Of a stretch of DNA of 64,000 nucleotides, positions 9,001 through 54,313 are shown one piece after another. The stretch spans positions 62,001 to 126,000 of IMG/VR virus record IMGVR_UViG_3300046170_000519, one strand, 5' to 3'. A program made the position numbers and the translations under genes. Position 1 is the stretch's first letter, and the number at the start of each line of letters is the position of its first letter. The notes below the pieces were generated by a model that was given only the letters and a program-made list of their open reading frames with translations, had not been told where the DNA came from and made no database searches.

Positions 9001-9002
9001 AT

Positions 9003-9237: not shown

Positions 9238-10014
9238 TCATGCAAAAAAATGTTTATCATCATATCTTTTTATTTTGTCAAGGTCTTTTGTTTTTATAAT
9301 TCTTGAATCTCTCTCGCATAAAAATTTATAATGCTCTACGTCATTTGACCATTTTTCTCCCGTCCAAAATTCAAACCCTTGATAGTCAGATTTGTAAATA
9401 CAGCAGTTTTCATAACCCATGCCCGTATACATATAATCTTTATTGTTTTTTATGCAATAATCGATTTCAGCTAAATTTGCATATTTGCCTAAATATAATT
9501 TTGGATCTTCATAGTCCCAAGCAAATTGAGTGGAGAAAACACTATTACTACCTACATCCCTCATGTAGGTAAAAGCTATTGGGCTGTGCCAACCACCGTT
9601 TTCATTTGGGGAATGATAGACCAAAAAGAACTTACGATTTTTCTCTAATTTAATTAATGGAGCTAACTCCCAAGATTTAAAATTTTTATATTTTATATAT
9701 TTTTCAAAAATATTATTTAATACATCTAAATTAACTTCTTCAGATCTGTAGCTCTTTATTTGGATTTTATCGCATTTTTTTCTAGCCTTTTTTGAGCTTT
9801 TAGTTTCTTTGAAGTTTTTTAAATTTATTCTAGTTTGTCTAGCTTGATACCAGTGGTTTTTTTCTTCGTTATTTGGGATAAAATAATCATCGGGTAGCCA
9901 GCCTTCTTGTAGAGCTAAATCTTCTTCTTCGAGTGGCACTTGAGCCATGCAATCGAAAAACATATAATCATATTCCTGAATCGCTCCCGAATAATGCTTG
10001 AAGTAAATTTTCAT
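9238..10014 (-). CDS. ATE1/Bpt-like aminoacyl-tRNA--protein transferase (GNAT fold)
   Basis: L..GW, WYQARQTRI, and C-terminal LGKYANLAEI...YMYTGMGY..C..YK.DY resembling ATE_C. Confidence 0.65.
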   Translation of the reverse strand: MKIYFKHYSGAIQEYDYMFFDCMAQVPLEEEDLALQEGWLPDDYFIPNNEEKNHWYQARQTRINLKNFKETKSSKKARKKCDKIQIKSYRSEEVNLDVLNNIFEKYIKYKNFKSWELAPLIKLEKNRKFFLVYHSPNENGGWHSPIAFTYMRDVGSNSVFSTQFAWDYEDPKLYLGKYANLAEIDYCIKNNKDYMYTGMGYENCCIYKSDYQGFEFWTGEKWSNDVEHYKFLCERDSRIIKTKDLDKIKRYDDKHFFA

Positions 10015-10403
10015 TATAATCCATTTGTGTCGCCCATAGCCCAGCCTTGAGTAGACGATATAGAACGATCAAGGAATTTACAGCCAATTGTTAAAGGAGA
10101 GAACTTTTTAAATTCATCTAAAACAAGAGTGTGATCAAAAGACTTACAGCTATAAATATCCAACTGAACTAAGTTAGGCTCTGTTTTTTCCCAAGAATGA
10201 AGAGCTATATGGCTTGTAGTAATTAAGCAGAAAGAACTAATGCCTTCGTTACCTTCTTTATCACACATCACAGATCTAGGAGCATAGAGAATTTTCATAT
10301 CAATTAGATCCACTAAACTTCTCATCCAGTCGCTTGTAAATTGAGTATTTTTAAACGGAGTTGATTTAAAGGTAGAACTAACAAGTAAATGCTTATGCTT
10401 CAT
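10014..10403 (-). CDS. speD: pyruvoyl-dependent S-adenosylmethionine decarboxylase family proenzyme
   Basis: true start MKHKHLLV at 10403; GIS...LITTSHIALHSW, QLDIYSCK.F, DR. Confidence 0.85.
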   Translation of the reverse strand: MKHKHLLVSSTFKSTPFKNTQFTSDWMRSLVDLIDMKILYAPRSVMCDKEGNEGISSFCLITTSHIALHSWEKTEPNLVQLDIYSCKSFDHTLVLDEFKKFSPLTIGCKFLDRSISSTQGWAMGDTNGL

Positions 10404-10719
10404 AGAAATAACTTTCAATAGGTGGTAATTTTTTATAGTAAGATATTCGAGCAAAATATTCTTCAGGATCTTTTTCTCTCTCCATGGAGAAGAAGTCAAA
10501 AAGTCTTGACAATAAATGGATTATTTTAGTTTTTTCAGATAATTCTATACCTAAGTTATCTGCAAGGCTATCAATTCGCTCTTTTGGAAAAAAAGATCCA
10601 ATTTCAGCTTCTAAATTTTTACAAGGCAACAAATCAAAAATTGAAAAATTAAAATATAATGTATGGAGCAAAAATCTATACTCAAAATCATATTTCAATG
10701 CAGCTTCTTCAAAATTCAT
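10393..10719 (-). CDS. hypothetical protein
   Basis: 108-aa ORF translationally coupled to its neighbours. Confidence 0.55.
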   Translation of the reverse strand: MNFEEAALKYDFEYRFLLHTLYFNFSIFDLLPCKNLEAEIGSFFPKERIDSLADNLGIELSEKTKIIHLLSRLFDFFSMEREKDPEEYFARISYYKKLPPIESYFYEA

Positions 10720-18611: not shown

Positions 18612-18677
18612 CTTTTAAGTGTATTTATATAAAATACCAATCCATAAACAATAAATTTTAAAAATGATAATAAATCC

Positions 18678-19268: not shown

Positions 19269-19279
19269 ATAATTACAAG

Positions 19280-19888: not shown

Positions 19889-19943
19889 AACAAGACACAA
19901 ACACTACGCCGAATACTACGATGATAAATGCGGCGATAAATAA
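19884..19943 (+). pseudogene. orphan 3' remnant of a sulfotransferase gene (NKTRHKHYAEYYDDKCGDK*)
   Basis: DNA and peptide match the tails of the genes ending at 17787 and 19268 (NKTKHKHYTEYYND); out of frame with the upstream gene. Confidence 0.7.
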
Positions 19944-19950
19944 AGATGAT

Positions 19951-36164: not shown

Positions 36165-36974
36165 ATGAAAACAAAAAGAAAAATATTAATAATGGGATTA
36201 CCTGGATCAGGCAAAACGACATTGGCAGAAATGCTAGTAAGTAAATTAGGAGCAGCATGGTTTAATGCTGATGCTGTGAGACAGGATATATATTCCGAGT
36301 TGGGGTTTAATTACGATGATAGAATTAAGCACGCCGAGAGGATGGGGAAATTATGTGACTGGGCTAAAATAGGTGGAGGATACGTAGTAGCAGACTTCGT
36401 ATGTCCTGTGCAGGAAGCTCGTAAAGCCTTTAATGCAGATTTCACTATATGGGTTGATAGAATTCAAGAGGGAAGATATGAAGACACAAATAAAATGTTT
36501 GAAAAACCTATGAATTATGACATCAGGTTGATTGACGGAACTCCTGAAGAATGGACTACTCAAGTTTTAAATAAATTAGAAGAAACAGAAAAATGGAACA
36601 ATCAAGCTCCTACAGCATTGTTAATTGGAAGATATCAACCTTTTCATGTAGGGCATAAAACTCTAGTGAAAGAAGCTATTGACCGTACAGGTCAATGCTG
36701 CATTGCTTTAAGAGATGTAGGAGGCATAGACGAAAAAAATCCTTATAATTTTGAAGAAGTTAAAGCAGAAATAATGTCCGCCTGTATAGAATTTGGAGAT
36801 AAAATTAAAGTTGTCGAGCTTCCAAATATCACTGATGTATTTTATGGTAGGGGAGTTGGATATAATATAGAACAGCTGGAATTAAGTAAAGAAATGCAAG
36901 CTATATCAGCGACAAGGATAAGAGCTGGGGAAATTAGTCAAGACGGTAAACTCACAGGGAAGCGACCTGAATAA
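36165..36974 (+). CDS. cysC: adenylylsulfate kinase fused to an HxGH nucleotidyltransferase domain
   Basis: GLPGSGKTT, NAD.VR, GF...DR, DFVCP, FE.P; C-domain IGRYQPFHVGH and ISATRIR. Confidence 0.8.
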   Translation: MKTKRKILIMGLPGSGKTTLAEMLVSKLGAAWFNADAVRQDIYSELGFNYDDRIKHAERMGKLCDWAKIGGGYVVADFVCPVQEARKAFNADFTIWVDRIQEGRYEDTNKMFEKPMNYDIRLIDGTPEEWTTQVLNKLEETEKWNNQAPTALLIGRYQPFHVGHKTLVKEAIDRTGQCCIALRDVGGIDEKNPYNFEEVKAEIMSACIEFGDKIKVVELPNITDVFYGRGVGYNIEQLELSKEMQAISATRIRAGEISQDGKLTGKRPE

Positions 36975-37321
36975 TGAAAAAGTATAAAACTTTTTTCTGT
37001 GATATAGATGGTACAATATTCAAATACAGAAAATTCGAAAAATATCAAACATCTAAGGCTGAAGTAATAGAGTCTACAAAAGAATATTTAATCAAAGCTC
37101 AAGAAGAAGGGCATATGATAATTCTTACAACGGCTAGACCAGAGTATTTAAGAGCTCACACAGAAAAAGAATTACAAGAAAATGAAATTCCCTATAGTAA
37201 ATTAATTATGGAGATAGAGAGAGGACCTAGATATTTGATTAATGATATGGATCCAGATAAACCTGGCAAAAGAGCTATTGGCATAAATCTGATTAGAGAT
37301 CAAGGAATCACTAAAAAATGA
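36974..37321 (+). CDS. small capless HAD-superfamily phosphatase
   Basis: FCDIDGT, LTTARP, INDM. Confidence 0.8.
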   Translation: MKKYKTFFCDIDGTIFKYRKFEKYQTSKAEVIESTKEYLIKAQEEGHMIILTTARPEYLRAHTEKELQENEIPYSKLIMEIERGPRYLINDMDPDKPGKRAIGINLIRDQGITKK

Positions 37322-37830
37322 AATTAAATATTCAATCAGAACAATTTCCAAATGTATTTTACGGAATCATTGAAATACCAAAAGAATCAAATGTAAAGTG
37401 TGAACTAAATGAAGGCTTTAACATGATTGAGTTTGATAGAGAGTTGAGCAACTCAATGATATATCCTGGGAATTATGGATTTATACCTTCAACGCTGGCT
37501 GAAGATGGGGATCCTGTGGATATAGTAATGATTGATAGTGATCCACATATTGAGGCTGGAACTTTGGTTAAACTAAAACCTTTAGGAATACTAAAAATGA
37601 TGGATTGCGGATTTATTGATAATAAAATATTAACAACAACAAGCAAAGATAAAAGCATTAATGATATAACAGATGTTTACGAAAAATTTTTAGATAAGAC
37701 TAAAGACTTTTTCGCAAATTATAAAAACCTAGATAATCAAAAAGTTGTGATAGGAGGGTGGAAAGGCAGAGAAGAAGCTCTTGGGTATTTAAAAGATAAG
37801 ATTAAGCCTAAGACAAAATTTCTAAAATAG
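37318..37830 (+). CDS. ppa: family I inorganic pyrophosphatase
   Basis: IEIPK, K.E, DR, YPGNYGFIPSTLAEDGDPVD, D.K, FF.NYK. Confidence 0.92.
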   Translation: MKLNIQSEQFPNVFYGIIEIPKESNVKCELNEGFNMIEFDRELSNSMIYPGNYGFIPSTLAEDGDPVDIVMIDSDPHIEAGTLVKLKPLGILKMMDCGFIDNKILTTTSKDKSINDITDVYEKFLDKTKDFFANYKNLDNQKVVIGGWKGREEALGYLKDKIKPKTKFLK

Positions 37831-39088
37831 GCTCTCCTTTATGAGCGACCTGGAAAGGTCTTCCAGATGGAGAATAATGAATGTCATTTATGGAAAGACC
37901 TAAAGCATACGCAATTGTCGCATTTAAGTCTTCGGGTTTAACTGGATTCACATCAACTTCCATGCCTTTTTCATCGCTCTGACCATAAATTGTCCCACCT
38001 TTTATAGCTCCTCCAGCAAAAAAAGCTGAAAAAGCTTTAGGCCAGTGATCTCTACCATCCCTTGGGTTAATTTTTGGAGTACGACCAAACTCAGATGTTA
38101 AAACGACTAATGTGTCATTCAATAAACCTCGAACTTCAAGGTCAAAAAGTAGAGCCCCTAACGCCTTATCAATATCAACACAATTTGCAGCAACACGTTC
38201 AAAGTTATTATCATGAGTGTCCCAACCTCCACGGGTAACTTCAACGTAACGCACTTTATTTTCGATCAACCTTCTGGCTAATAAACACCCTTGCCCGAAA
38301 TTGCTTTCACCATACAATTCAACCATAACTTCTGGTTCAGCAGAAATATCAAAAGCTTTTAAGTCATCACTCCGCATGAGTTTTACGGCATCTTTATATA
38401 AATCGGTATATGCACGAATTTTTTTTTGATTGTATCTTTCGCTAAATACAGCATTTAATTGTTCAGCCGTTTTTATTCTATCGTTAAATCGTGAGGCATC
38501 CAAATAATCAGCCATTGAGCTGTTAGCTAACCCTGCCTTAGGATTTCTTATAGGCAAAGCTCCGTAACGAGATTCTAAAAAGCCAGCTCCTCCTCCGCCT
38601 CCACCGATCTTTACATTAGTAGGGATAGTTCTATTTATTGAACCAGAAAGCTTGGAGACCCAACTTCCGAAAGTAGGATGTACAATTGTTCCACGTTTTT
38701 GATAGCTCGTATGCATTAAATAACTAGCTTGTTCATGAGCTCCTTGATTGCTAGTTACAGAGCGAACAATAGCCGCATTATGCATATGCTTCGCAACCGT
38801 AGGTAAATTCTCTGAGAGAAAAACATCATCAACAGTTGTTTTAATAGATTGAACTGGGCCTTGAACATCAGGACTTTGAGGTTTTGGGTCGAAAGTATCA
38901 AGGTGCGACATTGCTCCAGCCATGTTTAAATAGATGACATGACGGGCTTTTGCGGGGCGAGAGCCTGGGGTTAAGGCATAGGAATTGTCGTGAATATAAG
39001 ACCCAACCAATGGCATTAACCCAACTCCTAAATAAGACTTGGCAGCTCTAGCAATAAATTCTCTTCTGTGTATTTCGTTATTTTTCAT
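37808..39088 (-). CDS. DUF1501 family protein with Tat signal
   Basis: HRREFI, VIYL.M.G.MSHLDTFDPKP, YG...FGQ.CLLARRL.E..VR.VEV, GWDTH, EFGRTP, GRDHWP. Confidence 0.92.
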   Translation of the reverse strand: MKNNEIHRREFIARAAKSYLGVGLMPLVGSYIHDNSYALTPGSRPAKARHVIYLNMAGAMSHLDTFDPKPQSPDVQGPVQSIKTTVDDVFLSENLPTVAKHMHNAAIVRSVTSNQGAHEQASYLMHTSYQKRGTIVHPTFGSWVSKLSGSINRTIPTNVKIGGGGGGAGFLESRYGALPIRNPKAGLANSSMADYLDASRFNDRIKTAEQLNAVFSERYNQKKIRAYTDLYKDAVKLMRSDDLKAFDISAEPEVMVELYGESNFGQGCLLARRLIENKVRYVEVTRGGWDTHDNNFERVAANCVDIDKALGALLFDLEVRGLLNDTLVVLTSEFGRTPKINPRDGRDHWPKAFSAFFAGGAIKGGTIYGQSDEKGMEVDVNPVKPEDLNATIAYALGLSINDIHYSPSGRPFQVAHKGEPILEILS

Positions 39089-39095
39089 AATAAAT

Positions 39096-39492
39096 TGGTG
39101 GACGTGGGGAGAGTCGAACTCCCGTCTTTAAATCTTCAAAGATATACATCTACAAGTTTAGTTTATTTTTTTTAAAGTTATGATATAAACATCCAACTAA
39201 CTATTTCAATTATTCACTCAAACTTGAGGCCCCCGAATACTCAGTGGTACAGTTTATGAAACAGATAAACTTTTTCTGTTTTGCAGATAGATGACCCCAC
39301 AATCCTTTTATCTGCGTCAAAGGTTGTAAGGTAGCAGATACTAGGCTGCTAAAGCAAGCGAATCGCTGTTTGGCGAGTAAGCTTTGATACGTGACTTGTT
39401 GCCATGTAAACATTTGCACCTTTTTAAGGAGCCAGATGCAACTCCTACTTGCAGTATACTAATTCAATTTAAATCGAATCCAGTACACGCCC
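39096..39492 (-). ncRNA. ssrA: tmRNA; predicted tag (A)GNKSRIKAYSPNSDSLALAA
   Basis: 5' GGGCGTG pairs with 3' CACGTCC-ACCA with G3:U; GGATTCGA after the 5' stem; T-arm GGGAG-TTCGACT-CTCCC; UA-N3-G resume signal; tag frame 39403-39341 ends LALAA-TAG. Confidence 0.93.
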
Positions 39493-39586
39493 ATAAAATT
39501 TTAAAGAACAAGTTGTTGTAGTATTATACCACAAGTTAATTATTTATTACACTTAAATATTGAAATTTTATGTGTATAAATAAGTA

Positions 39587-39661
39587 ATGATTCATCATGT
39601 TACAATTCAACAGTTAATAATATTACTAAGTATAAGTATAGCCTTAGCGTTTTTTTTATGA
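39587..39661 (+). CDS. possible 24-aa hydrophobic peptide MIHHVTIQQLIILLSISIALAFFL
   Basis: preceded by GTGTATAAATA; single TM-like segment; too short to be sure. Confidence 0.3.
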   Translation: MIHHVTIQQLIILLSISIALAFFL

Positions 39662-42121
39662 AGAGAAGTTTACTTCCCCATTTTCATATCTAAAATGTAT
39701 ATTTGATTTCGATTTTATTTTTTTTGCTAGTATTGATTCAGCCACAGGAGTTTCTATATGAGATTGGAATAATCTTTCAATAGGTCTAGCTCCAAGAGAA
39801 ATGTTAGAAAGCTCATCTAGAAAAAAATTAACTAAAGAGTTTTCAAGGAAAATTTTAACTTTGAAGTTATTTTTTGCCATTTTTTTATTCAAATTTGTGA
39901 GATGCTGATTAATTATTCTTTTATAATCTTCATTTGAGAAATCTGAGAAGAAAATAATTTCATCTAATCTGTTAATAAACTCAGGAGAAAAGAAAGATTT
40001 AGCTTTATCAATAACTTTATCTCGTACTATATCTAATTTAGCATCATGATTTTGAAAACCAATATGAGATCCAGAACTTGAACTCATAATTTCACTACCT
40101 ATATTACTCGTTAAAATAATTAAACAATTAGAAAAATCAGCCTGCCTTCCGAAATTATCAAATATTTTCCCCTCATCAAGAATAGATAGCAAACTTTTAA
40201 AGACTTCGGGGTGAGCTTTTTCTACTTCATCAAACAAAATCACACTATAAGGATTCCGACGAACTGAATCGATAAATTTACTACCTTCATCGTAACCAAC
40301 ATAGCCTGGAGAAGATCCAGTAATTTTTGAAACACTGGCTGCCTCACTAAATTCGCCCATGTCCAGCCTGATTAAATTATTTTCACCGCCATAAATGATT
40401 TTAGAAATGATTTTAGCAGTTAAAGTTTTTCCTGTCCCAGTTTTACCCGTTAATAAAAAACAGCCTATAGGTTTTGCTGGATTAGATAGCCCACAGGTAG
40501 ATCTAACTAATGCTCTATAAATAGAATCTAAAGCTTCATCCTGCCCTACAATCTCTTTTTTGAGTTTAGATTTTAAATTCAAAACCTTTTCATCTAAAGA
40601 TAAAGAAATAGAGCTAATCGGTAAGCCTGTTTTTTCAGAGACTAGACGTTCGATATCTTGAGCATTAATGTGAATTTTTTGTTTAGCAATATCTTTCTGC
40701 CAAGAGTCTAAAAGGTTTTGATATTCAATGAAGAGATTATCTATTTTTTCTCCAATAACACCCTTTTTCTTAGAGCAAGACTCTTGAAAATCTTCGTCAA
40801 TTAAATTTTCTAATTTAGATTCAAGATTAATGAGATTCTCTGGTTTTCTATAAAACTTAACTTTAGCCTTAGCTCCAGCTTCATCTATTAAATCAATAGC
40901 TTTATCTGGCAAAAATCTATCATTTAAAAAACGAATACTTAAATCGACAGCTTTTTTAAGAGAGTTTTTTCTATACAAAACCTTATGAAAAGATTCGTAT
41001 TCAGGAGTCAAGCATTCTAAAATTTTAAAACAATCTTCAGGGGAAGGCTCATTTACATACAAAGGTTGAAATCTTCTAGATAACGCTGGATCTCTTTCAA
41101 TGCTTTTTTTAAATTCAGACATTGTGGTTGCTCCAATACAAGAAATGTCACGCCTAGAAAGAAGAGGCTTTAGGATATTAGCCGCATCTAAACCTCCTTC
41201 TGCGCCCCCTGCTCCAATAAGAGTATGTATTTCATCAATAAATAATATGTTATTTGTTCCTACAAAATATTTATCCAAAAGTTTTTTAAAACGTTCTTCG
41301 AATTGTCCTCTATACTTAGTTCCTGAAATTAAATGGTTCAAATTTAAAGAAAAAATAGTTTTTGAACTAAGGTCATTGGGAACTTTTTTTTGAACAATTT
41401 GTTGCGACAAAGCTTCGATTAAAGCTGTTTTGCCGACACCAGCCTCACCTAAAAGAATAGGATTGTTTTTTTGCCTTCTTGATAAAATTTCAGTCAATGA
41501 TTGTATATCACTTGATCTGCAAACAACTTTATCAAAAGCTCCTGAAGCTGCTAAATCATTAAAATTAATTAAAAATTCAGGATTGTTTTTTACAGTTTTT
41601 GTTTCTGTGGGAATGGGAGCATTTTTAGGATTTAGATGCACTTCTTTAGCTTTTAGAAACTTTTTGACATCATCATATTTATGAATAACTTCACCCTCTA
41701 ATATTGTTAAAATATTTTTAGCAAGTTCTTTGGAGTTAATTCCGAAAGAATCCAAGAAGTTTGAAACATCTCGATCTCGAAATAAGCAAACTAAAACATG
41801 CTCTATTCCTACATAATCATGGATGTAAGCTTCTGCAAGCACCACAGACTCTCTAAGAATTTTTTTAAAAGATTTGGAGTAAGTTAATTTATCTATAGAA
41901 AAAGATTTGCTTTCAGACTTTAAGTTTAGAATTTGATCTATATTCATGGAGGAAAGTTCTCCTGATATATTCATTAACTGAAAGATGCTATGTTGAATTT
42001 TAGAAACTCCATACAATAAATGCAAGGGCTCAATGAATTCATGTTCTAAATCAACAGCAAGCCTTTTTGCTATTTTTATAGATTGTTGAACTCTTGGAGT
42101 AAAGTTTGGTAAAATTTCCAT
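39656..42121 (-). CDS. clpC: ClpC/ClpA-type AAA+ protease ATPase subunit
   Basis: Clp-N repeats, GEAGVGKT, GTKYRGQFEER, FIDEIH, RFLPDKAIDL, GKTGTGKT, PGYVGY, FDEVEKAHP, IGF loop, GARP. Confidence 0.9.
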   Translation of the reverse strand: MEILPNFTPRVQQSIKIAKRLAVDLEHEFIEPLHLLYGVSKIQHSIFQLMNISGELSSMNIDQILNLKSESKSFSIDKLTYSKSFKKILRESVVLAEAYIHDYVGIEHVLVCLFRDRDVSNFLDSFGINSKELAKNILTILEGEVIHKYDDVKKFLKAKEVHLNPKNAPIPTETKTVKNNPEFLINFNDLAASGAFDKVVCRSSDIQSLTEILSRRQKNNPILLGEAGVGKTALIEALSQQIVQKKVPNDLSSKTIFSLNLNHLISGTKYRGQFEERFKKLLDKYFVGTNNILFIDEIHTLIGAGGAEGGLDAANILKPLLSRRDISCIGATTMSEFKKSIERDPALSRRFQPLYVNEPSPEDCFKILECLTPEYESFHKVLYRKNSLKKAVDLSIRFLNDRFLPDKAIDLIDEAGAKAKVKFYRKPENLINLESKLENLIDEDFQESCSKKKGVIGEKIDNLFIEYQNLLDSWQKDIAKQKIHINAQDIERLVSEKTGLPISSISLSLDEKVLNLKSKLKKEIVGQDEALDSIYRALVRSTCGLSNPAKPIGCFLLTGKTGTGKTLTAKIISKIIYGGENNLIRLDMGEFSEAASVSKITGSSPGYVGYDEGSKFIDSVRRNPYSVILFDEVEKAHPEVFKSLLSILDEGKIFDNFGRQADFSNCLIILTSNIGSEIMSSSSGSHIGFQNHDAKLDIVRDKVIDKAKSFFSPEFINRLDEIIFFSDFSNEDYKRIINQHLTNLNKKMAKNNFKVKIFLENSLVNFFLDELSNISLGARPIERLFQSHIETPVAESILAKKIKSKSNIHFRYENGEVNFSS

Positions 42122-44694
42122 TATTTCAAATCTCCTAACTTCATAAATATTTTTTCTTTTAACAACATTAAAGAGTCTACAAAGACAATATCATTGTGTT
42201 TTGACCCAATGAATGAAACTATATCATCTTTCACTGGCAAAACTTTACCTTGATCTATGTATTCTGAATATTTATTACCTCTAGCATTATCCATAAACAT
42301 AGCTGAATATGATCCGTATTCATCTGAGATTATCATTTTAAAATATTTATTACCATTTCTACTTACACCTTTATAGAAATCTTTTATAACTCCTATAAAT
42401 TTTCCACGACATCTTTCTTCACTGTAAAAATTTAAAGAATTGTAAATGTTTTCTGTGTCTTGGAATACAGATTTTAAATCACAACTATAGCTATAGCCTA
42501 AAAGCTGTGTTTCAAAATACCAATTCGCAAACTTTTCGTACTTGCTGTTTTGTAGATAAATTTCTTTATACTTTGAATATTTAGCTTTAAAATTCTTGAA
42601 CCTCGAATCTTTCATGAAAAGTTTCCCGTCAGAACAAATTAAACCTTTTTCACTTTCCGCTATAATGTTCAATAATTTATTATCGTATTTATCAGCAAGC
42701 TCTACAACCATCTTCTTTTCTCTATCTGTTAGTAAATTAAAAGATTGAGCTTCAAGAACTAAGAGGGGGCGAGAACAAGAATAATTGGGTAGGCAACCAG
42801 CTTGAATTAAAGAAGAAAGTATTCCTATATTTAACCCTGCACTTTTAGCTGAAATAAAAATGTTAAATTTATTTGGGTCTAAATTATCTCTAAATTTACT
42901 CAGGGATTCTAAAGATTTTTCACTAACCCCTTTTATACTATTGAGCCCAAAGCGTAAATTGTCACCTTCTTTGCTGAAATCCATCTGCGACCTTTCTAGG
43001 TCTGGGGGGAGTAATTTTATATTAAAAAAGCTCAACTCTTGAGAAATTTTGTTAATTTCATCTTGCTGACAAGGCTCGAATTTACTCATTTTAAGTAAGC
43101 TTAAGAAAAAATCCTGAGGGAAATTAAATTTTAGGTAGACCGTCCAAGATGCAAGCATAGCATAGGCTATCGAATGGCTTTTGTTAAAAGAATAATTTGC
43201 ACTATCCTCAGCGACTTTCCACAAAATATCCGACACCTCAATTGGGTAATTGTTTTCCTCAATTTTTTGCTGTATTTTCTGTTTCCAAGCTGGCATAAGA
43301 TCAGTTTTTTTCTTGCCAACAATTCTCCTGAGCTGCTCAGCCTCATCTAGAGAAAAACCTACAGCAACAACCATTTTCATTAACTGCTCTTGATATAAGG
43401 GTATTCCTCCTGTGTAGGACAAAATCTCTTTAAAGAAGTCGTGAATGATATTAGAGCAACCAGTTTTTACAAAATCCGCATAGGAATCAGAGAATTCCAA
43501 TGCTCCTGGTCTGGCTAGAGCTATTGTAGCACTAACCTGCTCAAGGTTACCTGGCTTAATTGACTGACAAACTCTATAGTTGGTTTCAGCTTCAATTTGA
43601 AACAGCCCATGAGGAGATCTTATTTGATTTTTTAGGGGAGAATAGATTGATTCGTCAGATAAGTCGATAGAGTTTACATCTATAGATAAAGATTTGCAAA
43701 CACCATGGATTACACTCAAGGTTCTTAAACCTAGAATGTCAAATTTAACCATCAACTCCGACACCCAATTCATATCATAAGCTGTAATGACAGCGCCTTC
43801 ATTAGTTGATTGTAATGGACATATCTCAGATATTTTATAATAAGATATAGCTATTCCTGAGGGATGGACTCCTGTGTTCTTGTTTAAACCTTCTATTTTT
43901 TTAGCTATGCCTATGCATTTTTTATTAGACTTAGCCCAAGAACTAAATCTTTCGCTCTCTTTAAGTGACTGAGAAATAGAGTGAACTTTTCCGAATTTTT
44001 TTGGTATATAGTCGCTTAAAATGTTTACCTCTTTTTCTGATAAATCGTTTACAATTTTACCACATTCTTTAATGCAAAGTTTACTGCTAAGCCTGTTAAG
44101 AGTTAAGATTTTAGCAGTTCTGTTAGGGTTTTTTTTGTCTATATAAGATAAAACTTTCTGACGATGCTCATAAGCAATATCGTTGTCGATATCAGCCAGT
44201 AGACTTCCATCCAGAAAAACTTCTCCATTTAATTCTGTTTTTTTTGCTCTACTTTTAGAAACAAAACGCTCGAAGAATAAATCATATTTTACTGGGTCTA
44301 CATTAGTGACATTAATTAGAAATAAAACTAAAGAACCTGCAGCAGAGCCTCTCCCTGGCCCAACTGGGATATCATTTTCGTGACAAAAATTAATAATATC
44401 CCAATTTAACAAAATGTAATCAACAAAACCTAATTCTTCTAAAGTATCTAACTCATAACTTAATCTTGAGACATAATTGTCATAAGAATGTAATTCAGAA
44501 AAAAAAGATTGGTCTAGAGAATTTAACCTCTGTTCGCACAAAGCTTTTAAGAAAGAAAAATTACTAACTTTATCTGATAACCCAACCTTAGTATAATATT
44601 TTTTTGAAATTTTTATTTTAGGAAGCTTTACTCCAGGAGGAGTTGAACCAGCATAACTTGAAAACTTTTTTAAAAAATTATTTTTACAATTCAT
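42121..44694 (-). CDS. dnaE: DNA polymerase III alpha, catalytic part lacking the PHP domain
   Basis: GPGRGSAAGSL, LFFERF, ADIDND, HPSG, KFDILGL, G.FQ, YQEQ.M, YSFNKSH, RFGL..IKGV, C-terminal OB fold. Confidence 0.92.
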   Translation of the reverse strand: MNCKNNFLKKFSSYAGSTPPGVKLPKIKISKKYYTKVGLSDKVSNFSFLKALCEQRLNSLDQSFFSELHSYDNYVSRLSYELDTLEELGFVDYILLNWDIINFCHENDIPVGPGRGSAAGSLVLFLINVTNVDPVKYDLFFERFVSKSRAKKTELNGEVFLDGSLLADIDNDIAYEHRQKVLSYIDKKNPNRTAKILTLNRLSSKLCIKECGKIVNDLSEKEVNILSDYIPKKFGKVHSISQSLKESERFSSWAKSNKKCIGIAKKIEGLNKNTGVHPSGIAISYYKISEICPLQSTNEGAVITAYDMNWVSELMVKFDILGLRTLSVIHGVCKSLSIDVNSIDLSDESIYSPLKNQIRSPHGLFQIEAETNYRVCQSIKPGNLEQVSATIALARPGALEFSDSYADFVKTGCSNIIHDFFKEILSYTGGIPLYQEQLMKMVVAVGFSLDEAEQLRRIVGKKKTDLMPAWKQKIQQKIEENNYPIEVSDILWKVAEDSANYSFNKSHSIAYAMLASWTVYLKFNFPQDFFLSLLKMSKFEPCQQDEINKISQELSFFNIKLLPPDLERSQMDFSKEGDNLRFGLNSIKGVSEKSLESLSKFRDNLDPNKFNIFISAKSAGLNIGILSSLIQAGCLPNYSCSRPLLVLEAQSFNLLTDREKKMVVELADKYDNKLLNIIAESEKGLICSDGKLFMKDSRFKNFKAKYSKYKEIYLQNSKYEKFANWYFETQLLGYSYSCDLKSVFQDTENIYNSLNFYSEERCRGKFIGVIKDFYKGVSRNGNKYFKMIISDEYGSYSAMFMDNARGNKYSEYIDQGKVLPVKDDIVSFIGSKHNDIVFVDSLMLLKEKIFMKLGDLK

Positions 44695-45322
44695 ATTTCC
44701 ATAGCATTTTATTGAATACTTCTAGATTTTTTTCTATATCATATAAAGCATCATGAAGTTTAGAGCTATCAAATTCAATTTGATATTTTTCGCATAAAAA
44801 TTTTAAGTTAGTTTTTAAGCCTTTTTTTCTTAAATTAGTTAATTTAAACTGCCATAATAAAAAATTACTAAAATCTATATCTAAGTCTAAAGCTGTTGAT
44901 TTAGCTAAACAGTTGGTGTCAATAGCTCTATTTAGGTAAGAGTAATCTGTTTTAAGATTACAAAGGTTTCTGTGAATATTGTGAATATAAATATCAAAAG
45001 ATAAAATGTTGTGACCAACAACATAGTATTCTTCATTGTATAAATAGCTATCAAATTTTTGAAGACATGATTTGGGGCAGAGAGCCTCAGATTCATAAGT
45101 CGATTTATTAAAACCTGTAACTTTAGCAGCTTCTTCAGAAATGTTTAAAGGATCCCAGCGTAAATAAAAATTAAATCTTTCAATAATTTTTTGACCATGG
45201 CAAACTAAAAAAGCTAATTGCCAAGGTTTATTTTCTGTTGAAACTAAATTTAAATTACAAGTCTCATAATCGAAAATTATAAATTTCCTATCTTTTTTAA
45301 AACGCATTAAAGAATCTTTCAT
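44684..45322 (-). CDS. DEDDh 3'-5' exonuclease (DnaQ-like)
   Basis: FDYET, GHN...FD, IDT, HDALYD. Confidence 0.88.
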   Translation of the reverse strand: MKDSLMRFKKDRKFIIFDYETCNLNLVSTENKPWQLAFLVCHGQKIIERFNFYLRWDPLNISEEAAKVTGFNKSTYESEALCPKSCLQKFDSYLYNEEYYVVGHNILSFDIYIHNIHRNLCNLKTDYSYLNRAIDTNCLAKSTALDLDIDFSNFLLWQFKLTNLRKKGLKTNLKFLCEKYQIEFDSSKLHDALYDIEKNLEVFNKMLWKYEL

Positions 45323-50938: not shown

Positions 50939-52669
50939 TTAATTATTAAAACTATATAAGGGTGAATTACTATATGCAATATCAGAAGAGTTTAAACTTC
51001 TCAAATATAATGCGTACGAAGATGGAGGATATGGATCTAAATTCTCAATCAAAACTTTTTTATTAATAATCATCGTTCCATCTATAACCGAATTATGATG
51101 AGATAAGAATTCTAAATTCCAAATATCTGGAAAACCATTTTTAAGAAGGTTTGATTTTAATCTTTCAAATTTAGAGTTAATATGAGAGTAATAAAGATCT
51201 TTATTATACAATTGTTTAGAATTACCCACAAAACTTTCCGAACAGCACATTTCGCAGCCAGTGTTTTTTATTAATTTTAACTGCTCGGAAATGGCATTTT
51301 CAGATGGGTGGACTGAGTAAGAAGCTAATAAAGCATAAGAGCCTTTTGAGGAGTTTAAAGAGTTAAAAAAACCTTCAGAGGTTCCATTGTGAGAAACTAA
51401 CTCAATGTTTACATAATCTAATGCAGATAAGCTTTTTGAGAAACCTTCAAAAAGTGGATCATCGAGCTTACTTTCAAATAATATAGAGACAGAAGGGTTA
51501 AAACTTTTTAAAATAGAGGGGGATTCTACTTTTAATTCTTTAATATAATTAGGAGCTTGATCAAAAACTAAAGAGGGGTCTGGATTAATTTTAAAACAAT
51601 TATCAATACTATTGATACCCATTTGGGTGAAGCACAACCTTTCTCCCCAGATCAAGTTTTTGGGATTTGGGCTATGCAAGCCAAAACCAATCACAGAGTG
51701 AGAGGCTCTGTAATTATCTAAATATATATCAAAAGCTTGATCAGCTGGGTTATTATGATCTAAGGGAATAAAATGAACATTTGAATAACCTCCAAATAAA
51801 AATTTAACATTATTAATATGTTGAGATCTAACTGGTATTACAACTTCTTTATGATTGTTGATAGCATATTGAATCGCATTACGAACAGAAAAATGATCTT
51901 TTGGCCCCTGATGACACATCAAAAAAACTTTATCACTATTTTTTACTTGCATTTCGTCATGAACAAAACCAAAAACAGATATTCTGTCACCAACAAAAGT
52001 TCCAAAAGTAATTGGTGGATGCTGCGGAAAAGGGACAGAATAATCATACTTGCTTTTGCTTGGGTCGTGATGATGATCCATGCAGGAATTTTTATATAAA
52101 GGTAGTAGTTTTTGAGATAAAAAACTTTGGTCATCGCTATAGGAAAATGTATAATTTCTTTTTGCTTTAGCCCATTTATCAATGCCATCAATCATGCTAA
52201 AAGATAAAGGAGTTTTTACTCCACACATGCCACCCATAATTGGAGACCAATGACCACTAGCATGGTCATGCATAGAATGAAGAACCTTGTCAGAGGATAT
52301 CCATTCGGTGACAGCAAATTTTTCTCTATAATTAACTAAAGAATCTGTATCCCTAAAAATAACCGCAGAAACATTTGGGTCGTCGGCAGCAAAATACCGC
52401 CAATACATCGGAGGTATTTTTGAGTCTACAACAAAAACCTCTGCCCCTGTTTTTTTAAGAGCTTCTAAATTTTTTAAATCAGGAGGGCAATAAAATCTAC
52501 ACACCCAATCTGGGTATATTTTTTTAGCTTCAAGAACGTTTTTCTCGGCACCTATTAAATATGTAGATTTCTCTCCATAGACAGAGAAGCTGATTACTTT
52601 TTTTTCTTTAACAAGAACCTCGTTAAAAATTGAAAAGTTAACTGCTGGATTTTTTAGGCTTAGGCTCAT
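50939..52669 (-). CDS. multidomain glycosyltransferase-like protein
   Basis: N-domain ISFSVYG...WR.FA.DD...RDTDS...GGM.G; central domain; C-domain is a degenerate copy of the GT2 at 13811-14533. Confidence 0.55.
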   Translation of the reverse strand: MSLSLKNPAVNFSIFNEVLVKEKKVISFSVYGEKSTYLIGAEKNVLEAKKIYPDWVCRFYCPPDLKNLEALKKTGAEVFVVDSKIPPMYWRYFAADDPNVSAVIFRDTDSLVNYREKFAVTEWISSDKVLHSMHDHASGHWSPIMGGMCGVKTPLSFSMIDGIDKWAKAKRNYTFSYSDDQSFLSQKLLPLYKNSCMDHHHDPSKSKYDYSVPFPQHPPITFGTFVGDRISVFGFVHDEMQVKNSDKVFLMCHQGPKDHFSVRNAIQYAINNHKEVVIPVRSQHINNVKFLFGGYSNVHFIPLDHNNPADQAFDIYLDNYRASHSVIGFGLHSPNPKNLIWGERLCFTQMGINSIDNCFKINPDPSLVFDQAPNYIKELKVESPSILKSFNPSVSILFESKLDDPLFEGFSKSLSALDYVNIELVSHNGTSEGFFNSLNSSKGSYALLASYSVHPSENAISEQLKLIKNTGCEMCCSESFVGNSKQLYNKDLYYSHINSKFERLKSNLLKNGFPDIWNLEFLSHHNSVIDGTMIINKKVLIENLDPYPPSSYALYLRSLNSSDIAYSNSPLYSFNN

Positions 52670-54254
52670 CAGAAAAAACTATGTCATCACAATTATCTTT
52701 ACCACTGATACAAAGCCAGTGAGGGTGATTACCTTCTTCAAAATTAAATTCAGCCTCCTCTTCATAATTCTCTTTACTCGCATACAAGATACGTTTATCT
52801 AATCTTGGGGCAAAAATTTTAGGAGGAGTCTCTCTACCTTTAGCTAAAGTACAAGCCCAGAAACTAAAAGAAGAGTTGGCTCTAAAAATTGAGCGAGCAA
52901 AATAAATTCTTAAGAAATCTGGAAACCAATCAAACATGATTTCAGGTAAAACTTGAGAACCTTCTGGGTATCGCCATGCACCCCTAGCTTTTATAGTACC
53001 TTGGCTGAGTGAGTTGCCTACACCCCATTTATTCGACCAATCATCAGATGTCCACTCAATCTCTTCTGGGTTATAGCCATATTTTTCAAAAGCTTTCAAA
53101 TAAGACTTCTTTGATATAACAGAATAACCACCATTTAATTTATAGTTAACATTTGATATGTCATCACGCCGAAGATGAGCGATATCATAAGTACCTTGCT
53201 TGTCTTCCATTCGTTTATAAAGGTCTAAATTCTTAACTTCATCAGAAAATTCGTAAAGCTTTAAAACATCTGAAAGTTTCATTTCATCGAATATTTTATG
53301 ATGATAGGCTGAAACACTATCTACACAAACCCCTTGTTTGTAGTCTGTATAAGTCTGTTCGGGGTTGTCTGGGTTAACATATCGAAAATCATAAATTGGA
53401 GAACGAGAGCAAAATTCTTTAGTAGCTTCTAAACGATACTGAAAGGAATCAAAGGGCGCAATTGATTGGTTCACGCTCTTTAATAACTCAGAATCTTCTA
53501 AGATTTCATAATCTAAATTAAATAATTTAGAACCTTCCCAGTCAGACGGTAGTAAAACTTTACCGTTTAACTTTTTAGCTCTATTATGGATATAAGCATA
53601 TGTATGCATTCTGTTGCCGAATCTACCATTCCAATGGAATAAAAATACATCACCTTGCTTTCTTTTGTTTTTGGGGTCATGAAATTTATAATAATTAATG
53701 TCTTGAGATAAATTTTTGAAATACTCTTCTCGATGCTCCACGGGAACATTTTCATTAATTAATTGAGCTATTAAATCATGGTTTTTATTTTTTTTAAAAA
53801 CAGGAGAGTTGCGAACACCAGCGACAGGAGGGTTTACATCTGAATCTCCTTGGCTTGGGTCTCTGACAGGAGAGGAAGCAGGTTTTGGCAACTCTTTTTC
53901 TCCAGCCAGTAAAGAAACTAAATCTGATCTCTTGAGTTCCGCTGAAGATTTTGCTTTTGTTGTTTTTGTGGATTTGTTTTTTGGGAGTTCTTCTGGTTTT
54001 GGAATGCGGTTTTCAGGTTTTGGCGCGGTGGACGAGTTTGGCTTTTTCATCTCTGGCTCAGGCTCTTCTGAAGCACCGTCTGTAAGCATTGCAAGTAAAT
54101 CTTTTTTAGTTTTTTCTGGAGGAAACTTTAGTTTTGAATTTTCAACAGTTTCACCAACAAGAGAAGATATTAAAGAATCTTTTTTGAGTTGCTTTGTATT
54201 AATTTCTCCATCTTCAGCTGTTTTTTTTATTTTTTCTTTTTCTTTTTTATTCAT
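52638..54254 (-). CDS. GT11-like fucosyltransferase with long disordered N-terminus
   Basis: GRFGNRM, HLRRDD, SDD, DF, ANSSFSFW. Confidence 0.7.
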   Translation of the reverse strand: MNKKEKEKIKKTAEDGEINTKQLKKDSLISSLVGETVENSKLKFPPEKTKKDLLAMLTDGASEEPEPEMKKPNSSTAPKPENRIPKPEELPKNKSTKTTKAKSSAELKRSDLVSLLAGEKELPKPASSPVRDPSQGDSDVNPPVAGVRNSPVFKKNKNHDLIAQLINENVPVEHREEYFKNLSQDINYYKFHDPKNKRKQGDVFLFHWNGRFGNRMHTYAYIHNRAKKLNGKVLLPSDWEGSKLFNLDYEILEDSELLKSVNQSIAPFDSFQYRLEATKEFCSRSPIYDFRYVNPDNPEQTYTDYKQGVCVDSVSAYHHKIFDEMKLSDVLKLYEFSDEVKNLDLYKRMEDKQGTYDIAHLRRDDISNVNYKLNGGYSVISKKSYLKAFEKYGYNPEEIEWTSDDWSNKWGVGNSLSQGTIKARGAWRYPEGSQVLPEIMFDWFPDFLRIYFARSIFRANSSFSFWACTLAKGRETPPKIFAPRLDKRILYASKENYEEEAEFNFEEGNHPHWLCISGKDNCDDIVFSDEPKPKKSSS

Positions 54255-54313
54255 TTTTAAAATAGATTATACTTTTATGGTAATTTTTAAAATTAAATTT
54301 TCTAAAATAATTA

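What the first reader, a model, noticed from the sequence alone, without database searches (positions are those of the whole stretch)
39096..42121. Phage tmRNA directly downstream of a phage ClpC, plus an ATE/Bpt-like enzyme: a viral degron toolkit
Seen: a full tmRNA whose 5' end lies ~160 nt after the clpC stop on the same strand. Its 20-residue tag GNKSRIKAYSPNSDSLALAA is rather long and basic. The ClpC keeps the IGF ClpP-docking loop, and an ATE1/Bpt-like transferase lies at 9238-10014. No clpP, clpS or smpB is in the window. Known: ssrA tags are C-degrons and aminoacyl transferases create N-degrons for Clp proteases; phage tmRNAs have been reported before. Inference: the phage supplies both degron writers and its own unfoldase to redirect host ClpP.
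Basis: partly seen in the sequence, partly recalled or inferred. Interest (0 to 1): 0.62.

Follow-up and report, generated by a model that had tools for sequence, protein, structure and literature searches.

The report
Jumbo-phage tmRNA beside a phage ClpC
A 206-kb marine jumbo phage really does carry its own ribosome-rescue RNA (tmRNA), a ClpC-type protein unfoldase and an ATE/Bpt-like transferase, all intact and conserved in relatives, but comparison with about 70 related phage loci gives no sign that the three work as one coordinated degradation-signal kit.

Summary
Rfam calls a full-length tmRNA at exactly 39096-39492 (-), 118 bits; ARAGORN misses it. It lies 163 nt after a ClpC-type Hsp100 gene (39656-42121, -). 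The ClpC has intact ATPase motifs and pore loops, and a ClpP-docking IGF loop. ORF 9238-10014 is an ATE/Bpt-family transferase by Pfam, profile-PDB search and fold. The whole 205,857-bp phage genome has no ClpP, ClpS, SmpB, SspB, MecA or integrase.

The 20-codon tag is under purifying selection, and the RNA helices show compensatory changes.

The "toolkit" reading is only partly supported.
- ClpC is the last cistron of a DnaQ-like/DnaE/ClpC operon in all 11 loci that could be read (1-nt stop/start overlap).
- tmRNA-ClpC adjacency holds only in the window's subclade. Among 44 IMG/VR loci found by a tmRNA signature, 1 is adjacent. In 10 genomes the two genes lie 1.4-72 kb apart.
- Two unrelated tag classes swap independently of the ClpC tree.
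- The ATE-like gene is coupled to a SpeD-like gene and is present in only 5 of 10 tmRNA+ClpC genomes.

Probable hosts are marine Opitutales-type Verrucomicrobia. They supply SmpB, ClpX, two ClpP paralogs and usually ClpS. Their tags share the G start and the LAA-type end with the phage tags.

The parts
39096..39492 (-). One-piece tmRNA gene (ssrA) with an encoded CCA end
   Evidence: Rfam RF00023 scores 118.3 bits over the full model. G3-U pair is invariant, and acceptor pair 4 and the T arm show compensatory changes. 28 of 87 predicted pairs change on both sides across 8 phage copies.
39341..39403 (-). Tag reading frame: resume codon GGC, 20 codons, stop TAG
   Evidence: Read. The resume position agrees with the Rfam alignment and with Opitutales tmRNAs, which share the AUGGC context. 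Among four class-1 copies, 29 of 45 nucleotide differences fall at codon position 3.
39217..39250 (-). Roughly 33-nt G+C-rich insert in the pseudoknot-3 region of the tmRNA
   Evidence: Present only in the window and L009, which carry different tag classes. Absent from the other six aligned copies. Single copy in the genome. RNA-library contigs of relatives skip it.
39493..39545 (-). Conserved 19-nt leader directly before the mature 5' end, plus an extended -10-like TGnTATAAT element at about 39523-39531
   Evidence: The leader is conserved in all nine phage copies, and -10-like or GTGTAATA motifs lie 25-45 nt upstream. The generic promoter scan did not list it, because there is no -35 match, so this is inference.
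39656..42121 (-). ClpC-type class I Hsp100 unfoldase, 821 aa; IGF ClpP-docking loop encoded at 40055-40063
   Evidence: Pfam finds Clp_N, AAA, AAA_lid_9, AAA_2 and ClpB_D2-small. The best PDB match is B. subtilis ClpC, 580 bits end to end. Walker A/B, pore loops and [IVLM]GF are conserved in 25 relatives and absent from host ClpB. PHROG 4871 scores 707 bits.
42121..44694 (-). DnaE-type Pol III alpha (no PHP domain); its TAA stop overlaps the ClpC ATG by 1 nt, with AGGAGA 9 nt upstream
   Evidence: The same overlap occurs in L002-L004, L006-L011 and L150.
44684..45322 (-). RNase_T/DnaQ-like exonuclease, first gene of the conserved exonuclease-DnaE-ClpC block
   Evidence: Pfam RNase_T; same order in all relatives.
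37808..39088 (-). DUF1501 protein with a twin-arginine-type signal; its ATG lies 8 nt after the tmRNA CCA. Host-derived cargo gene.
   Evidence: Pfam DUF1501 scores 368 bits. It is 60-73% identical to more than 30 marine Opitutales/Opitutia MAGs. The same tmRNA-DUF1501 junction occurs in L004, L006, the C4 contig and several IMG/VR loci. RNA-library contigs bridge the junction.
9238..10014 (-). ATE/Bpt-family aminoacyl-tRNA transferase-like protein, 258 aa
   Evidence: It is 50-87% identical in clade relatives. No PHROG family matches it.
10014..10499 (-). AdoMet_dc (SpeD)-like pyruvoyl-decarboxylase homologue (likely start ATG at 10403); its stop overlaps the ATE-like ATG by 1 nt
   Evidence: Pfam AdoMet_dc scores 40.5 bits. 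The Ser-His processing site and the Cys align with Aquifex SpeD. The gene pair is conserved in L118 and L119. Overlap shown.

Best explanation
The window belongs to a clade of roughly 120-215-kb marine jumbo phages that replicate with a DnaE-type polymerase. Their probable hosts are marine Opitutales-type Verrucomicrobia. The phage carries three separate add-ons to host proteostasis and translation.

1. A working one-piece tmRNA. Host AlaRS charges it, and host SmpB and EF-Tu deliver it to stalled ribosomes (inferred). It appends a phage-encoded tag whose first residue and LAA-type end are those of the host lineage. Tagged products therefore enter the host's ordinary ssrA route, ClpXP first and possibly the phage ClpC as well. 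The likely benefit is to keep ribosomes recycling when host mRNA is degraded or cut during infection.

2. A ClpC-type unfoldase made as the last, translationally coupled cistron of the exonuclease-DnaE operon. It has every motif needed for ATP-driven threading and for docking on ClpP. It therefore most likely works with host ClpP1P2, and/or alone as a remodelling chaperone, early in infection alongside replication.

3. An ATE/Bpt-like transferase co-translated with a SpeD-like decarboxylase. Its substrate is unknown.

The tmRNA lies next to clpC here because, in this subclade, it sits at the boundary between the replication operon and a variable cargo region. This is adjacency by descent and does not mark a functional pair.

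Shown: the presence, integrity and conservation of each part, their gene linkages, and the absence of ClpP, SmpB and ClpS from the phage. Inferred: the host, use of host partners, and the benefit to the phage.
For: tmRNA function:
- Full Rfam match.
- The G3-U pair is invariant and there are many compensatory pairs.
- The tag frame is under purifying selection.
- The tag motif is conserved across 58 IMG/VR contigs.
- A conserved leader precedes the gene.
- Near-identical contigs occur in four metatranscriptome libraries.

Dependence on the host:
- The 206-kb genome has no SmpB, ClpP, ClpS, SspB or MecA.
- The candidate host order has SmpB in 30/31 genomes, ClpX in 31/31 and two ClpP paralogs.

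Host assignment:
- DUF1501 is 60-73% identical to more than 30 Opitutales-type MAGs.
- The resume-codon context and the tag ends are shared with that lineage.

ClpC:
- Motifs and the ClpP loop are conserved.
- It is only 36-37% identical to host ClpC, so it is an old phage gene.
- DnaE-ClpC overlap occurs in 11/11 loci.
- The complex test of ClpC D2 with two host ClpP copies gave weak support: ipSAE 0.34 against a best control of 0.01. In calibration 51 of 78 solved complexes and 2 of 108 mismatched pairs reached the mark. Only 5 of those 78 solved complexes passed at 0.60 or below, as did all 4 of the mismatches that passed.

No specific pairing:
- Adjacency 1/44, and distances of 1.4-72 kb.
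- Tag class is incongruent with the ClpC tree: L006 groups with L004 and L010 at 99/97 support.
- N-domain identity does not follow tag class.
- The ATE-like gene is present in 5/10 genomes.
Against: - ClpC was found in 10 of 10 tmRNA-bearing genomes tested. Co-occurrence at genome level is therefore perfect, although ClpC seems to be a core gene of the whole clade.
- The interior of the tag is strongly conserved across the phage family. This hints at a dedicated reader, an adaptor or an unfoldase N-domain, which a pure ribosome-recycling role would not need.
- The window's own tag interior is not significantly host-like (50 of 300 shuffles score as well).
- Class-2 tags are 34-40 residues long, have net charge -9 to -11, and end in MVA or PMAA. 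They may not be ClpX degrons.
- The host assignment rests mainly on one cargo gene.
- Expression is not proven: contigs in RNA libraries may derive from DNA.
Confidence: 0.6

Rival explanations
1. Integrated viral degron toolkit. The phage tmRNA writes a phage-specific C-degron and the ATE-like enzyme writes N-degrons. The phage ClpC, docked on host ClpP, is the dedicated reader, so host ClpP is redirected to substrates chosen by the phage.
For: - All three parts are intact.
- The phage has no ClpP, and the ClpP loop is conserved.
- ClpC is present in 10/10 tmRNA-bearing genomes.
- The tag interior is conserved and differs from host tags.
- The host order lacks ATE/Bpt but often has ClpS and Aat, so a Bpt-like writer would extend an existing N-degron route.
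- One relative (G045) has a distant ATE-like gene 1.5 kb from its tmRNA.
- By established knowledge, ClpA and mycobacterial ClpC1 can degrade ssrA-tagged proteins.
Against: - Adjacency is not conserved.
- ClpC, including its N-domain, does not co-vary with tag class, even though the two classes are radically different.
- The ATE-like gene is absent from 3 genomes rated 100% complete that have both tmRNA and ClpC.
- ClpC is linked to DnaE, and the ATE-like gene to a SpeD-like gene.
- The LAA-type tag end is the canonical ClpX determinant.
- The phage has no ClpS, MecA or SspB-type adaptor.
Confidence: 0.17
2. ClpC is mainly a replication-linked remodelling chaperone. It would assemble or disassemble replisome or initiator complexes, or fold large phage proteins. 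It would be comparable to ClpX acting on Mu transposase or ClpA acting on P1 RepA. Under this reading it has no relation to the tmRNA, and ClpP docking is dispensable or secondary.
For: - The 1-nt stop/start overlap with DnaE and the fixed order exonuclease-DnaE-ClpC hold in 11/11 loci spanning 39-57% ClpC identity.
- ClpC occurs without a tmRNA within 8-10 kb in L003, L011 and L150.
- Some relatives carry HSP20 in the same module.
- Clp ATPases are a core gene in another large aquatic phage lineage (PMC12619734).
Against: - The [IVLM]GF loop is kept in all but one (AGF in P0018) of the 23 phage-clade ClpCs aligned, and is absent from host ClpB. This argues for selection on ClpP docking.
- Operon position in a phage reflects timing as much as function.
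Confidence: 0.2
3. The tmRNA is a decoy or counter-defence RNA and not a degradation tagger. It could titrate host SmpB. It could replace the host tag to escape a host response that senses or uses trans-translation. It could also rescue ribosomes stalled by abortive-infection RNases. The long acidic class-2 tags may stabilise or mark products instead of destroying them.
For: - The phage has no SmpB, so it must compete for the host protein.
- Two very different tag classes are exchanged between closely related phages, as expected for an arms-race or host-matching trait.
- Class-2 tag ends deviate from LAA.
Against: - The tag frame is under purifying selection, and class 1 keeps the canonical end. 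A pure decoy would not need a conserved tag.
- The mRNA-like domain is full length, unlike the DS6A-type copy that has only the tRNA-like domain (PMC4131195).
Confidence: 0.15
4. The tmRNA is a leftover attachment site (attP) or a captured host gene with no function in the phage.
For: Bacterial ssrA genes are common integration sites (established knowledge).
Against: - The gene is full length, not a 3' fragment.
- It is only about 52% identical to candidate host tmRNAs.
- It is conserved with compensatory changes across at least 67 phage loci.
- No tyrosine integrase was found in the genome.
Confidence: 0.02

Closest known systems
Phage-encoded tmRNAs: Bxz1-type mycobacteriophages, Bacillus phage G, huge phages from metagenomes
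   Same: Full-length ssrA genes in large lytic phages. In this phage no SmpB is encoded. Their role is assumed to lie in ribosome rescue (PMC4131195; PMC7162821).
   Different: This is a large marine family: 58 IMG/VR contigs share a 19-nt signature. The tag interior is conserved. There are two tag classes, one basic of 20-33 residues and one acidic of 34-40 residues, which recombine among phages. ARAGORN, the tool used in the huge-phage survey, misses or mis-reads them.
Bacillus subtilis / Staphylococcus aureus ClpC-ClpP (with MecA) and Mycobacterium ClpC1-ClpP1P2
   Same: Same architecture: N-domain, D1, short middle domain, D2 with a ClpP loop. Best sequence match is B. subtilis ClpC at 580 bits. 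All catalytic motifs are present.
   Different: The best PDB match (B. subtilis ClpC) aligns end to end at 580 bits, and identity to the candidate-host ClpC is only 36-37%. Pfam detects no UVR motif, and only one Clp_N repeat passes. The phage has no MecA, McsB-type or ClpS adaptor. The gene is phage-encoded and translationally coupled to DnaE.
Phage Clp-family ATPases already catalogued (PHROG 4871; VOG02072, core in moraphages)
   Same: An Hsp100-type ATPase as a conserved gene of large aquatic phages (PMC12619734).
   Different: That lineage uses PolB and PolA and is predicted to infect Bacteroidota. Here the gene is the terminal cistron of a DnaQ-like/DnaE operon, in phages that probably infect Verrucomicrobia.
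Bacterial Bpt / eukaryotic ATE1 aminoacyl-tRNA-protein transferases (N-degron writers read by ClpS-ClpAP)
   Same: ATE_C core motifs and fold.
   Different: NCBIfam Bpt models score far below their cut-offs, 33 against 170 bits. No ATE_N match was found. The gene is coupled to a SpeD-like gene. Its substrate is unknown, and the phage has no ClpS.
E. coli ssrA tag with SspB, ClpXP and ClpAP
   Same: A C-terminal LAA-type degron plus an upstream tag segment that a second factor could read.
   Different: No SspB homologue was found in the phage. Whether any factor reads the conserved phage tag interior is unknown.

Membership tests
tmRNA (Rfam RF00023, one-piece form) | Covariance-model score at or above the gathering threshold over the full model | tested here: met
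   118.3 bits against 47, model 1-374. Relatives score 98-137 bits.
tmRNA (Rfam RF00023, one-piece form) | tRNA-Ala-like domain: 7-bp acceptor stem with G3-U70, T arm, 3' CCA | tested here: met
   The G-U pair at position 3 is invariant in 8/8 copies. Pair 4 and two T-arm pairs change on both sides. CCA is encoded.
tmRNA (Rfam RF00023, one-piece form) | Open tag frame after pseudoknot 1, ending in an Ala-rich hydrophobic C-terminus, with the stop codon in a helix-5 loop | tested here: met
   20 codons ending in LALAA. The stop lies in the loop of a covarying hairpin. Third-position bias is 29/45.
tmRNA (Rfam RF00023, one-piece form) | Four pseudoknots | tested here: inconclusive
   The PK1 and PK2 stems covary. 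The PK3-PK4 region aligns with low posterior probability and carries a 33-nt insert. Pseudoknots were not modelled explicitly.
tmRNA (Rfam RF00023, one-piece form) | Works with SmpB and is charged with alanine | not testable with these tools
   The phage has no SmpB. The candidate host order has it in 30/31 genomes.
ClpC-type class I Hsp100 (ClpP-coupled unfoldase) | Two AAA+ modules with Walker A/B motifs and pore-loop tyrosines | tested here: met
   All motifs are present and conserved in 25 relatives.
ClpC-type class I Hsp100 (ClpP-coupled unfoldase) | ClpP-docking [IVL]GF loop in D2 | tested here: met
   IGF at residues 687-689. [IVLM]GF is present in the phage clade and in host ClpC, and absent from host ClpB.
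ClpC-type class I Hsp100 (ClpP-coupled unfoldase) | Short coiled-coil middle domain (ClpC length, not ClpB length) with a UVR motif | tested here: inconclusive
   The protein aligns end to end with 810-aa B. subtilis ClpC, including the middle domain. Pfam finds no UVR domain in it, although bacterial relatives at about 41% identity have one.
ClpC-type class I Hsp100 (ClpP-coupled unfoldase) | Curated equivalog score (NCBIfam) | tested here: not met
   The best hits are the ClpB and ClpA models, at 669 and 644 bits. Both are below their cut-offs of 1232 and 993. It is a divergent family member, not an equivalog of a named bacterial protein.
ClpC-type class I Hsp100 (ClpP-coupled unfoldase) | Physical binding to ClpP | tested here: inconclusive
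   The complex test gave weak support: 0.34 against a best control of 0.01. The runs agree in at least 65% of contacts, and partner pLDDT is at least 74. A pass at this level is more often wrong than right unless the guess was likely beforehand.
ATE/Bpt aminoacyl-tRNA-protein transferase | Pfam ATE_C at or above the gathering score | tested here: met
   26.9 against 25 bits, which is marginal. ATE_C is precomputed on nearly all of the 77 relatives.
ATE/Bpt aminoacyl-tRNA-protein transferase | Catalytic core motifs and GNAT-type double fold closest to ATE1 | tested here: met
   The family profile hits yeast ATE1 at E 3e-5 over the core. The top Foldseek match is human ATE1 (E 2e-8, TM 0.58), ahead of FemX, aminoacyl-PG synthases and L/F-transferase.
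ATE/Bpt aminoacyl-tRNA-protein transferase | ATE_N domain / curated Bpt equivalog score | tested here: not met
   There is no ATE_N hit. The NCBIfam arginyltransferase models score 33 bits or less against cut-offs of 170-252. Residues 1-19 are modelled with pLDDT below 50.
ATE/Bpt aminoacyl-tRNA-protein transferase | Transfers an amino acid from aminoacyl-tRNA to protein N-termini | not testable with these tools
   Needs an enzyme assay.

The most novel reading that the evidence does not exclude
The conserved interior of the phage tags and the phage ATE-like enzyme write degrons that the phage ClpC reads directly through its divergent N-domain. Docked on host ClpP1P2, it would form a hybrid phage-host protease that clears stalled-translation products and selected host proteins during infection. 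This would be a virus-encoded writer-reader pair for regulated proteolysis.
Probability: 0.15. Interest if true: 0.8.

Novelty: new variant of a known kind. Interest (0 to 1): 0.5.

Why it matters
Why phages carry tmRNA is still unknown. This family gives a large natural data set to work with: at least 67 loci, a tag under purifying selection, and two exchangeable tag classes. It also supplies a candidate host lineage and a co-resident ClpC, so the question can be put to direct biochemical test using tag-reporter degradation by host ClpXP versus phage ClpC with ClpP.

The universal translational coupling of an Hsp100 unfoldase to DnaE suggests an unrecognised link between phage replication and protein unfolding.

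The ATE-like/SpeD-like pair matches no PHROG family, and two paper searches on related terms found no description of it in phages. Its chemistry is unknown.

On the practical side, ARAGORN-based surveys under-count and mis-read these tmRNAs.

Tried and rejected
- ARAGORN, in the tool and run locally, does not find the window's tmRNA. In relatives it mis-assigns tags. I used Rfam and nhmmer instead.
- A ClpC peptide-pattern scan of IMG/VR found no relative.
- INPHARED holds no tmRNA match. Its only ClpC hits are below 40% identity, mostly in unannotated or contaminated records.
A locus cannot serve as a centre.
- The ENA contigs behind L002-L011 are not held whole. Whether L003, L011 and L150 have a tmRNA elsewhere in their genomes therefore remains unknown.
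- The generic promoter/terminator scan gave nothing above chance near the tmRNA.
- The attP-remnant idea was rejected: the gene is full length and the genome has no integrase.
- Recent capture of ClpC from the host was rejected: identity is 36-37%, against 60-73% for DUF1501.
- Host-tag mimicry as a general rule is not established. The C-terminal half of class-2 tags resembles one host tag type (2-3 of 300 shuffles score as well). The window's own tag does not (50 of 300).
The comparison was redone from stored files.
- The complex prediction for ClpC D2 with host ClpP gave only weak support.
- RNA-library contigs show presence only, not transcription.
- The large representative protein search and the metagenome contig scan were not needed and were not used.

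Full report
**What the window is.** It is bases 62001-126000 of a 205,857-bp IMG/VR virus record rated 100% complete by CheckV. G+C is 34%. The whole genome has only two tRNA genes. The region around the finding encodes DnaB, a PD-(D/E)XK nuclease, a UvsX-like recombinase, a DnaQ-like exonuclease and a DnaE-type polymerase without a PHP domain. This is a jumbo phage with its own replisome.

**Checking the observation.**
- Rfam finds a complete tmRNA at 39096-39492 on the minus strand (118 bits, E 1e-45). ARAGORN does not find it.
- The acceptor stem has the G3-U pair that marks alanine identity, and the CCA end is encoded.
- The tag runs from GGC at 39403 to TAG at 39341. It has 20 residues, net charge +2, and ends in LALAA.
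- The ClpC ORF (39656-42121, 821 aa) ends 163 nt before the tmRNA 5' end.
- ClpC aligns end to end with B. subtilis ClpC (580 bits). It has both Walker A/B pairs, both pore loops and an IGF tripeptide at residues 687-689, where ClpC proteins carry their ClpP-docking loop.
- ORF 9238-10014 passes Pfam ATE_C only just (26.9 against 25 bits). However, a profile of 23 relatives hits yeast ATE1 structures (E 3e-5). An AF2 model (pLDDT 80) matches human ATE1 best, ahead of FemX, aminoacyl-phosphatidylglycerol synthases and L/F-transferase.
- Six-frame searches of the whole genome find no ClpP, SmpB, ClpS, MecA, SspB, HSP20 or tyrosine integrase.

**Is the tmRNA functional?**
- Eight phage copies aligned keep the structure through change. 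28 of 87 predicted pairs change on both sides, including acceptor pair 4, the T arm, helix 2, pseudoknots 1 and 2, and the hairpin that holds the stop codon.
- Among four copies with the window's tag type, 29 of 45 nucleotide differences in the tag fall at third codon positions, and synonymous codon changes outnumber replacements. The tag is therefore translated and selected as a peptide.
- A 19-nt leader directly before the 5' end is conserved in all copies, and -10-like motifs lie upstream. The gene probably has its own promoter.
- Near-identical contigs covering the tmRNA, DUF1501 and ClpC occur in four metatranscriptome libraries, and two contigs bridge the tmRNA 3' part and DUF1501. This fits expression but does not prove it.

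**Relatives and linkage.** ClpC homologues at 39-57% identity lie on many 150-215-kb metagenomic contigs.
- In all ten loci fetched through ClpC homologues (ClpC 41-57% identical to the window's), the order is DnaQ-like exonuclease, DnaE, ClpC. The ClpC start coincides with, or in two loci lies just after, the DnaE stop, as in the window (TAATG, with AGGAGA upstream).
- A tmRNA follows ClpC within 51-163 nt in the window and five loci. It lies 1.4-2 kb downstream in two more.
- It lies 20 kb away in a 210-kb contig mis-binned in a Cellvibrionales MAG.
- It is absent within 8-10 kb in three loci.
- That sample was chosen through ClpC, so I also searched IMG/VR with a 19-nt tmRNA signature. 58 contigs matched, all with full-length copies by nhmmer.
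- Of 44 of these with at least 1.5 kb upstream, one has ClpC within 200 nt, five have it 1.4-5.7 kb upstream, and 38 have none in the locus.
- In ten of these genomes ClpC is always present (38-42% identity), but it lies 1.4, 5.7, 5.7, 6.2, 10.8, 14.5, 16.5, 19, 22 and 72 kb from the tmRNA.
- One of them carries a tag differing from the window's at two residues, yet its ClpC is 14.5 kb away.

The adjacency is therefore a feature of one subclade only.

**Tags.** Two unrelated classes exist.
- Class 1, the window's type, has 20-33 residues and is basic. Its interior motif is conserved across the family and it ends in LALAA.
- Class 2 has 34-40 residues, net charge -9 to -11, and ends in MVA or PMAA.
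- On a ClpC tree, a class-2 phage (L006) groups with two class-1 phages (L004, L010) at 99/97 support. At least two switches are needed.
- ClpC N-domain identity follows the tree, not the tag class.

If the phage ClpC read the tag interior, some co-variation would be expected. None is seen.

**Host.**
- The DUF1501 gene starts 8 nt after the tmRNA. It is 60-73% identical to genes in more than 30 marine Opitutales/Opitutia MAGs and single-cell genomes.
- tmRNAs of that lineage share the AUGGC resume context, mostly begin their tags with G, and end them in LALAA, AMAA or PMAA. Several small-genome members have long tags of 17-24 residues.
- None of the 31 sampled tags equals a phage tag.
- The C-terminal half of class 2 resembles one host tag type (2-3 of 300 shuffles score as well). 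The window's tag does not resemble any beyond its ends.
- These bacteria have their own ClpC (36-37% identical to the phage's), ClpB, and two ClpP paralogs. ClpX was found in 31/31 genomes, SmpB in 30/31, ClpS in 18/31 and in 4 of the 5 closest DUF1501 donors, Aat in 10/31, and ATE/Bpt in none of 31.

**The ATE-like gene.**
- It is well conserved (50-87% identity).
- Its start overlaps the stop of a SpeD-like gene that keeps the Ser-His processing site. This pair recurs in two relatives.
- It is present in only 5 of the 10 tmRNA+ClpC genomes, and is missing from three genomes rated 100% complete.
- It matches no PHROG family.

**Reading.** Each part is a real, probably active addition to host translation or proteostasis. 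The links that the genomes actually show are ClpC with DnaE, the ATE-like gene with a SpeD-like gene, and, often, the tmRNA with DUF1501.
- The tmRNA most likely sustains ribosome rescue using host SmpB. It feeds products into the host's LAA-directed proteolysis.
- ClpC most likely acts with host ClpP1P2, and/or as a remodelling chaperone during replication. A complex test of its D2 domain with two host ClpP copies gave only weak support: 0.34 against a best control of 0.01. A pass at this level is more often wrong than right unless the pairing was already likely.
- The integrated toolkit remains possible. ClpC co-occurs in 10/10 genomes, the tag interior is conserved, and the host lacks a Bpt. 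It has no positive comparative support, so I put it at about 0.15-0.2.

**Compared with what is known.**
- Phage tmRNAs are documented in Bxz1-type mycobacteriophages, phage G and huge phages.
- Phage Clp ATPases are documented as PHROG 4871 and as a core gene of moraphages.
- New here are the size and tag diversity of this marine tmRNA family, the universal DnaE-ClpC coupling, the phage ATE-like/SpeD-like pair, and the probable verrucomicrobial host.

Noticed in passing
window 42119-42123; L002-L011 and L150 at the DnaE/ClpC junction: The DnaE stop and the ClpC start overlap by one base (TAATG), with a Shine-Dalgarno-like AGGAGA upstream. The order DnaQ-like exonuclease, DnaE (no PHP domain), ClpC is fixed across relatives whose ClpC is only 39-57% identical. 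This suggests an unfoldase co-expressed with the replisome.
   Followed up: partly
window 9238-10499 (-); L118 5615-6777; L119 5609-6771: A SpeD-like (AdoMet_dc) gene and the ATE-like transferase form a conserved, overlapping gene pair. No known pathway joins a pyruvoyl decarboxylase with an aminoacyl-tRNA transferase. QueF-like, DUF2452, methyltransferase and glycosyltransferase genes lie just downstream.
   Followed up: partly
window 37808-39088 (-) and 39089-39095: A DUF1501 gene with a twin-arginine-type signal starts 8 nt after the tmRNA CCA. The same junction occurs in L004, L006, the C4 contig and several IMG/VR loci. In L006 the gene is split into four short ORFs. Relatives L008 and L010 also carry PSCyt2/PSD1 beside DUF1501. 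These look like cargo genes taken from Opitutales-type hosts.
   Followed up: partly
window about 39217-39250 (-); L009 tmRNA: A 33-nt G+C-rich hairpin-forming insert sits in the tmRNA of the window and of L009 only, although the two carry different tag classes. It is single copy in the genome. RNA-library contigs of relatives lack it.
   Followed up: partly
window 16391-20622 (+) and 36165-37830 (+): There are two sulfotransferase-family genes, plus an APS-kinase-like protein (with a weak cytidylyltransferase-like part), a HAD phosphatase and an inorganic pyrophosphatase. Together they look like a phage sulfation (PAPS supply and use) module. Several glycosyltransferases lie at 2786-5936 and 10716-11642.
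   Followed up: no
G001 contig C4 (210,818 bp; loci L012, L097, L104, L114, L115): A public MAG labelled Cellvibrionales contains a whole jumbo-phage contig of this clade, alongside the MAG's own gammaproteobacterial tmRNA. Its ClpC and DnaE are broken by several frameshifts or stops, probably long-read errors. Its DUF1501 is 92% identical to the window's while its ClpC is only 45% identical, so the cargo region is mosaic.
   Followed up: partly
upstream of tmRNAs: window 39523-39560; L004, L006-L010, L097: A recurring GTGTAATA or TGnTATAAT motif lies 25-45 nt before the tmRNA leader. The clade also encodes sigma-factor-like proteins (Sigma70_r2/r4 hits in L007 and L118). This may be a phage-specific promoter.
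   Followed up: no
window 55852-63999 (-): A giant ORF of more than 2,450 residues runs off the window end. It has a higher G+C content (about 39%) than the rest of the window. Relative L002 has a 2,622-residue counterpart with no Pfam hit.
   Followed up: no
G045 (IMG/VR record behind L151), 52536-55183 (-): In this relative a distant ATE-like gene (34% identical) lies only 1.5 kb upstream of the tmRNA. This is the single case of close ATE-tmRNA linkage seen.
   Followed up: no
window 527-1531 (-), 8575-9009 (-), 12285-13376 (-): UvdE-type UV endonuclease, a QueF-like protein and a C5 cytosine methylase. These hint at DNA repair and DNA modification functions. The rest of the genome was not checked for other deazaguanine pathway genes.
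   Followed up: no
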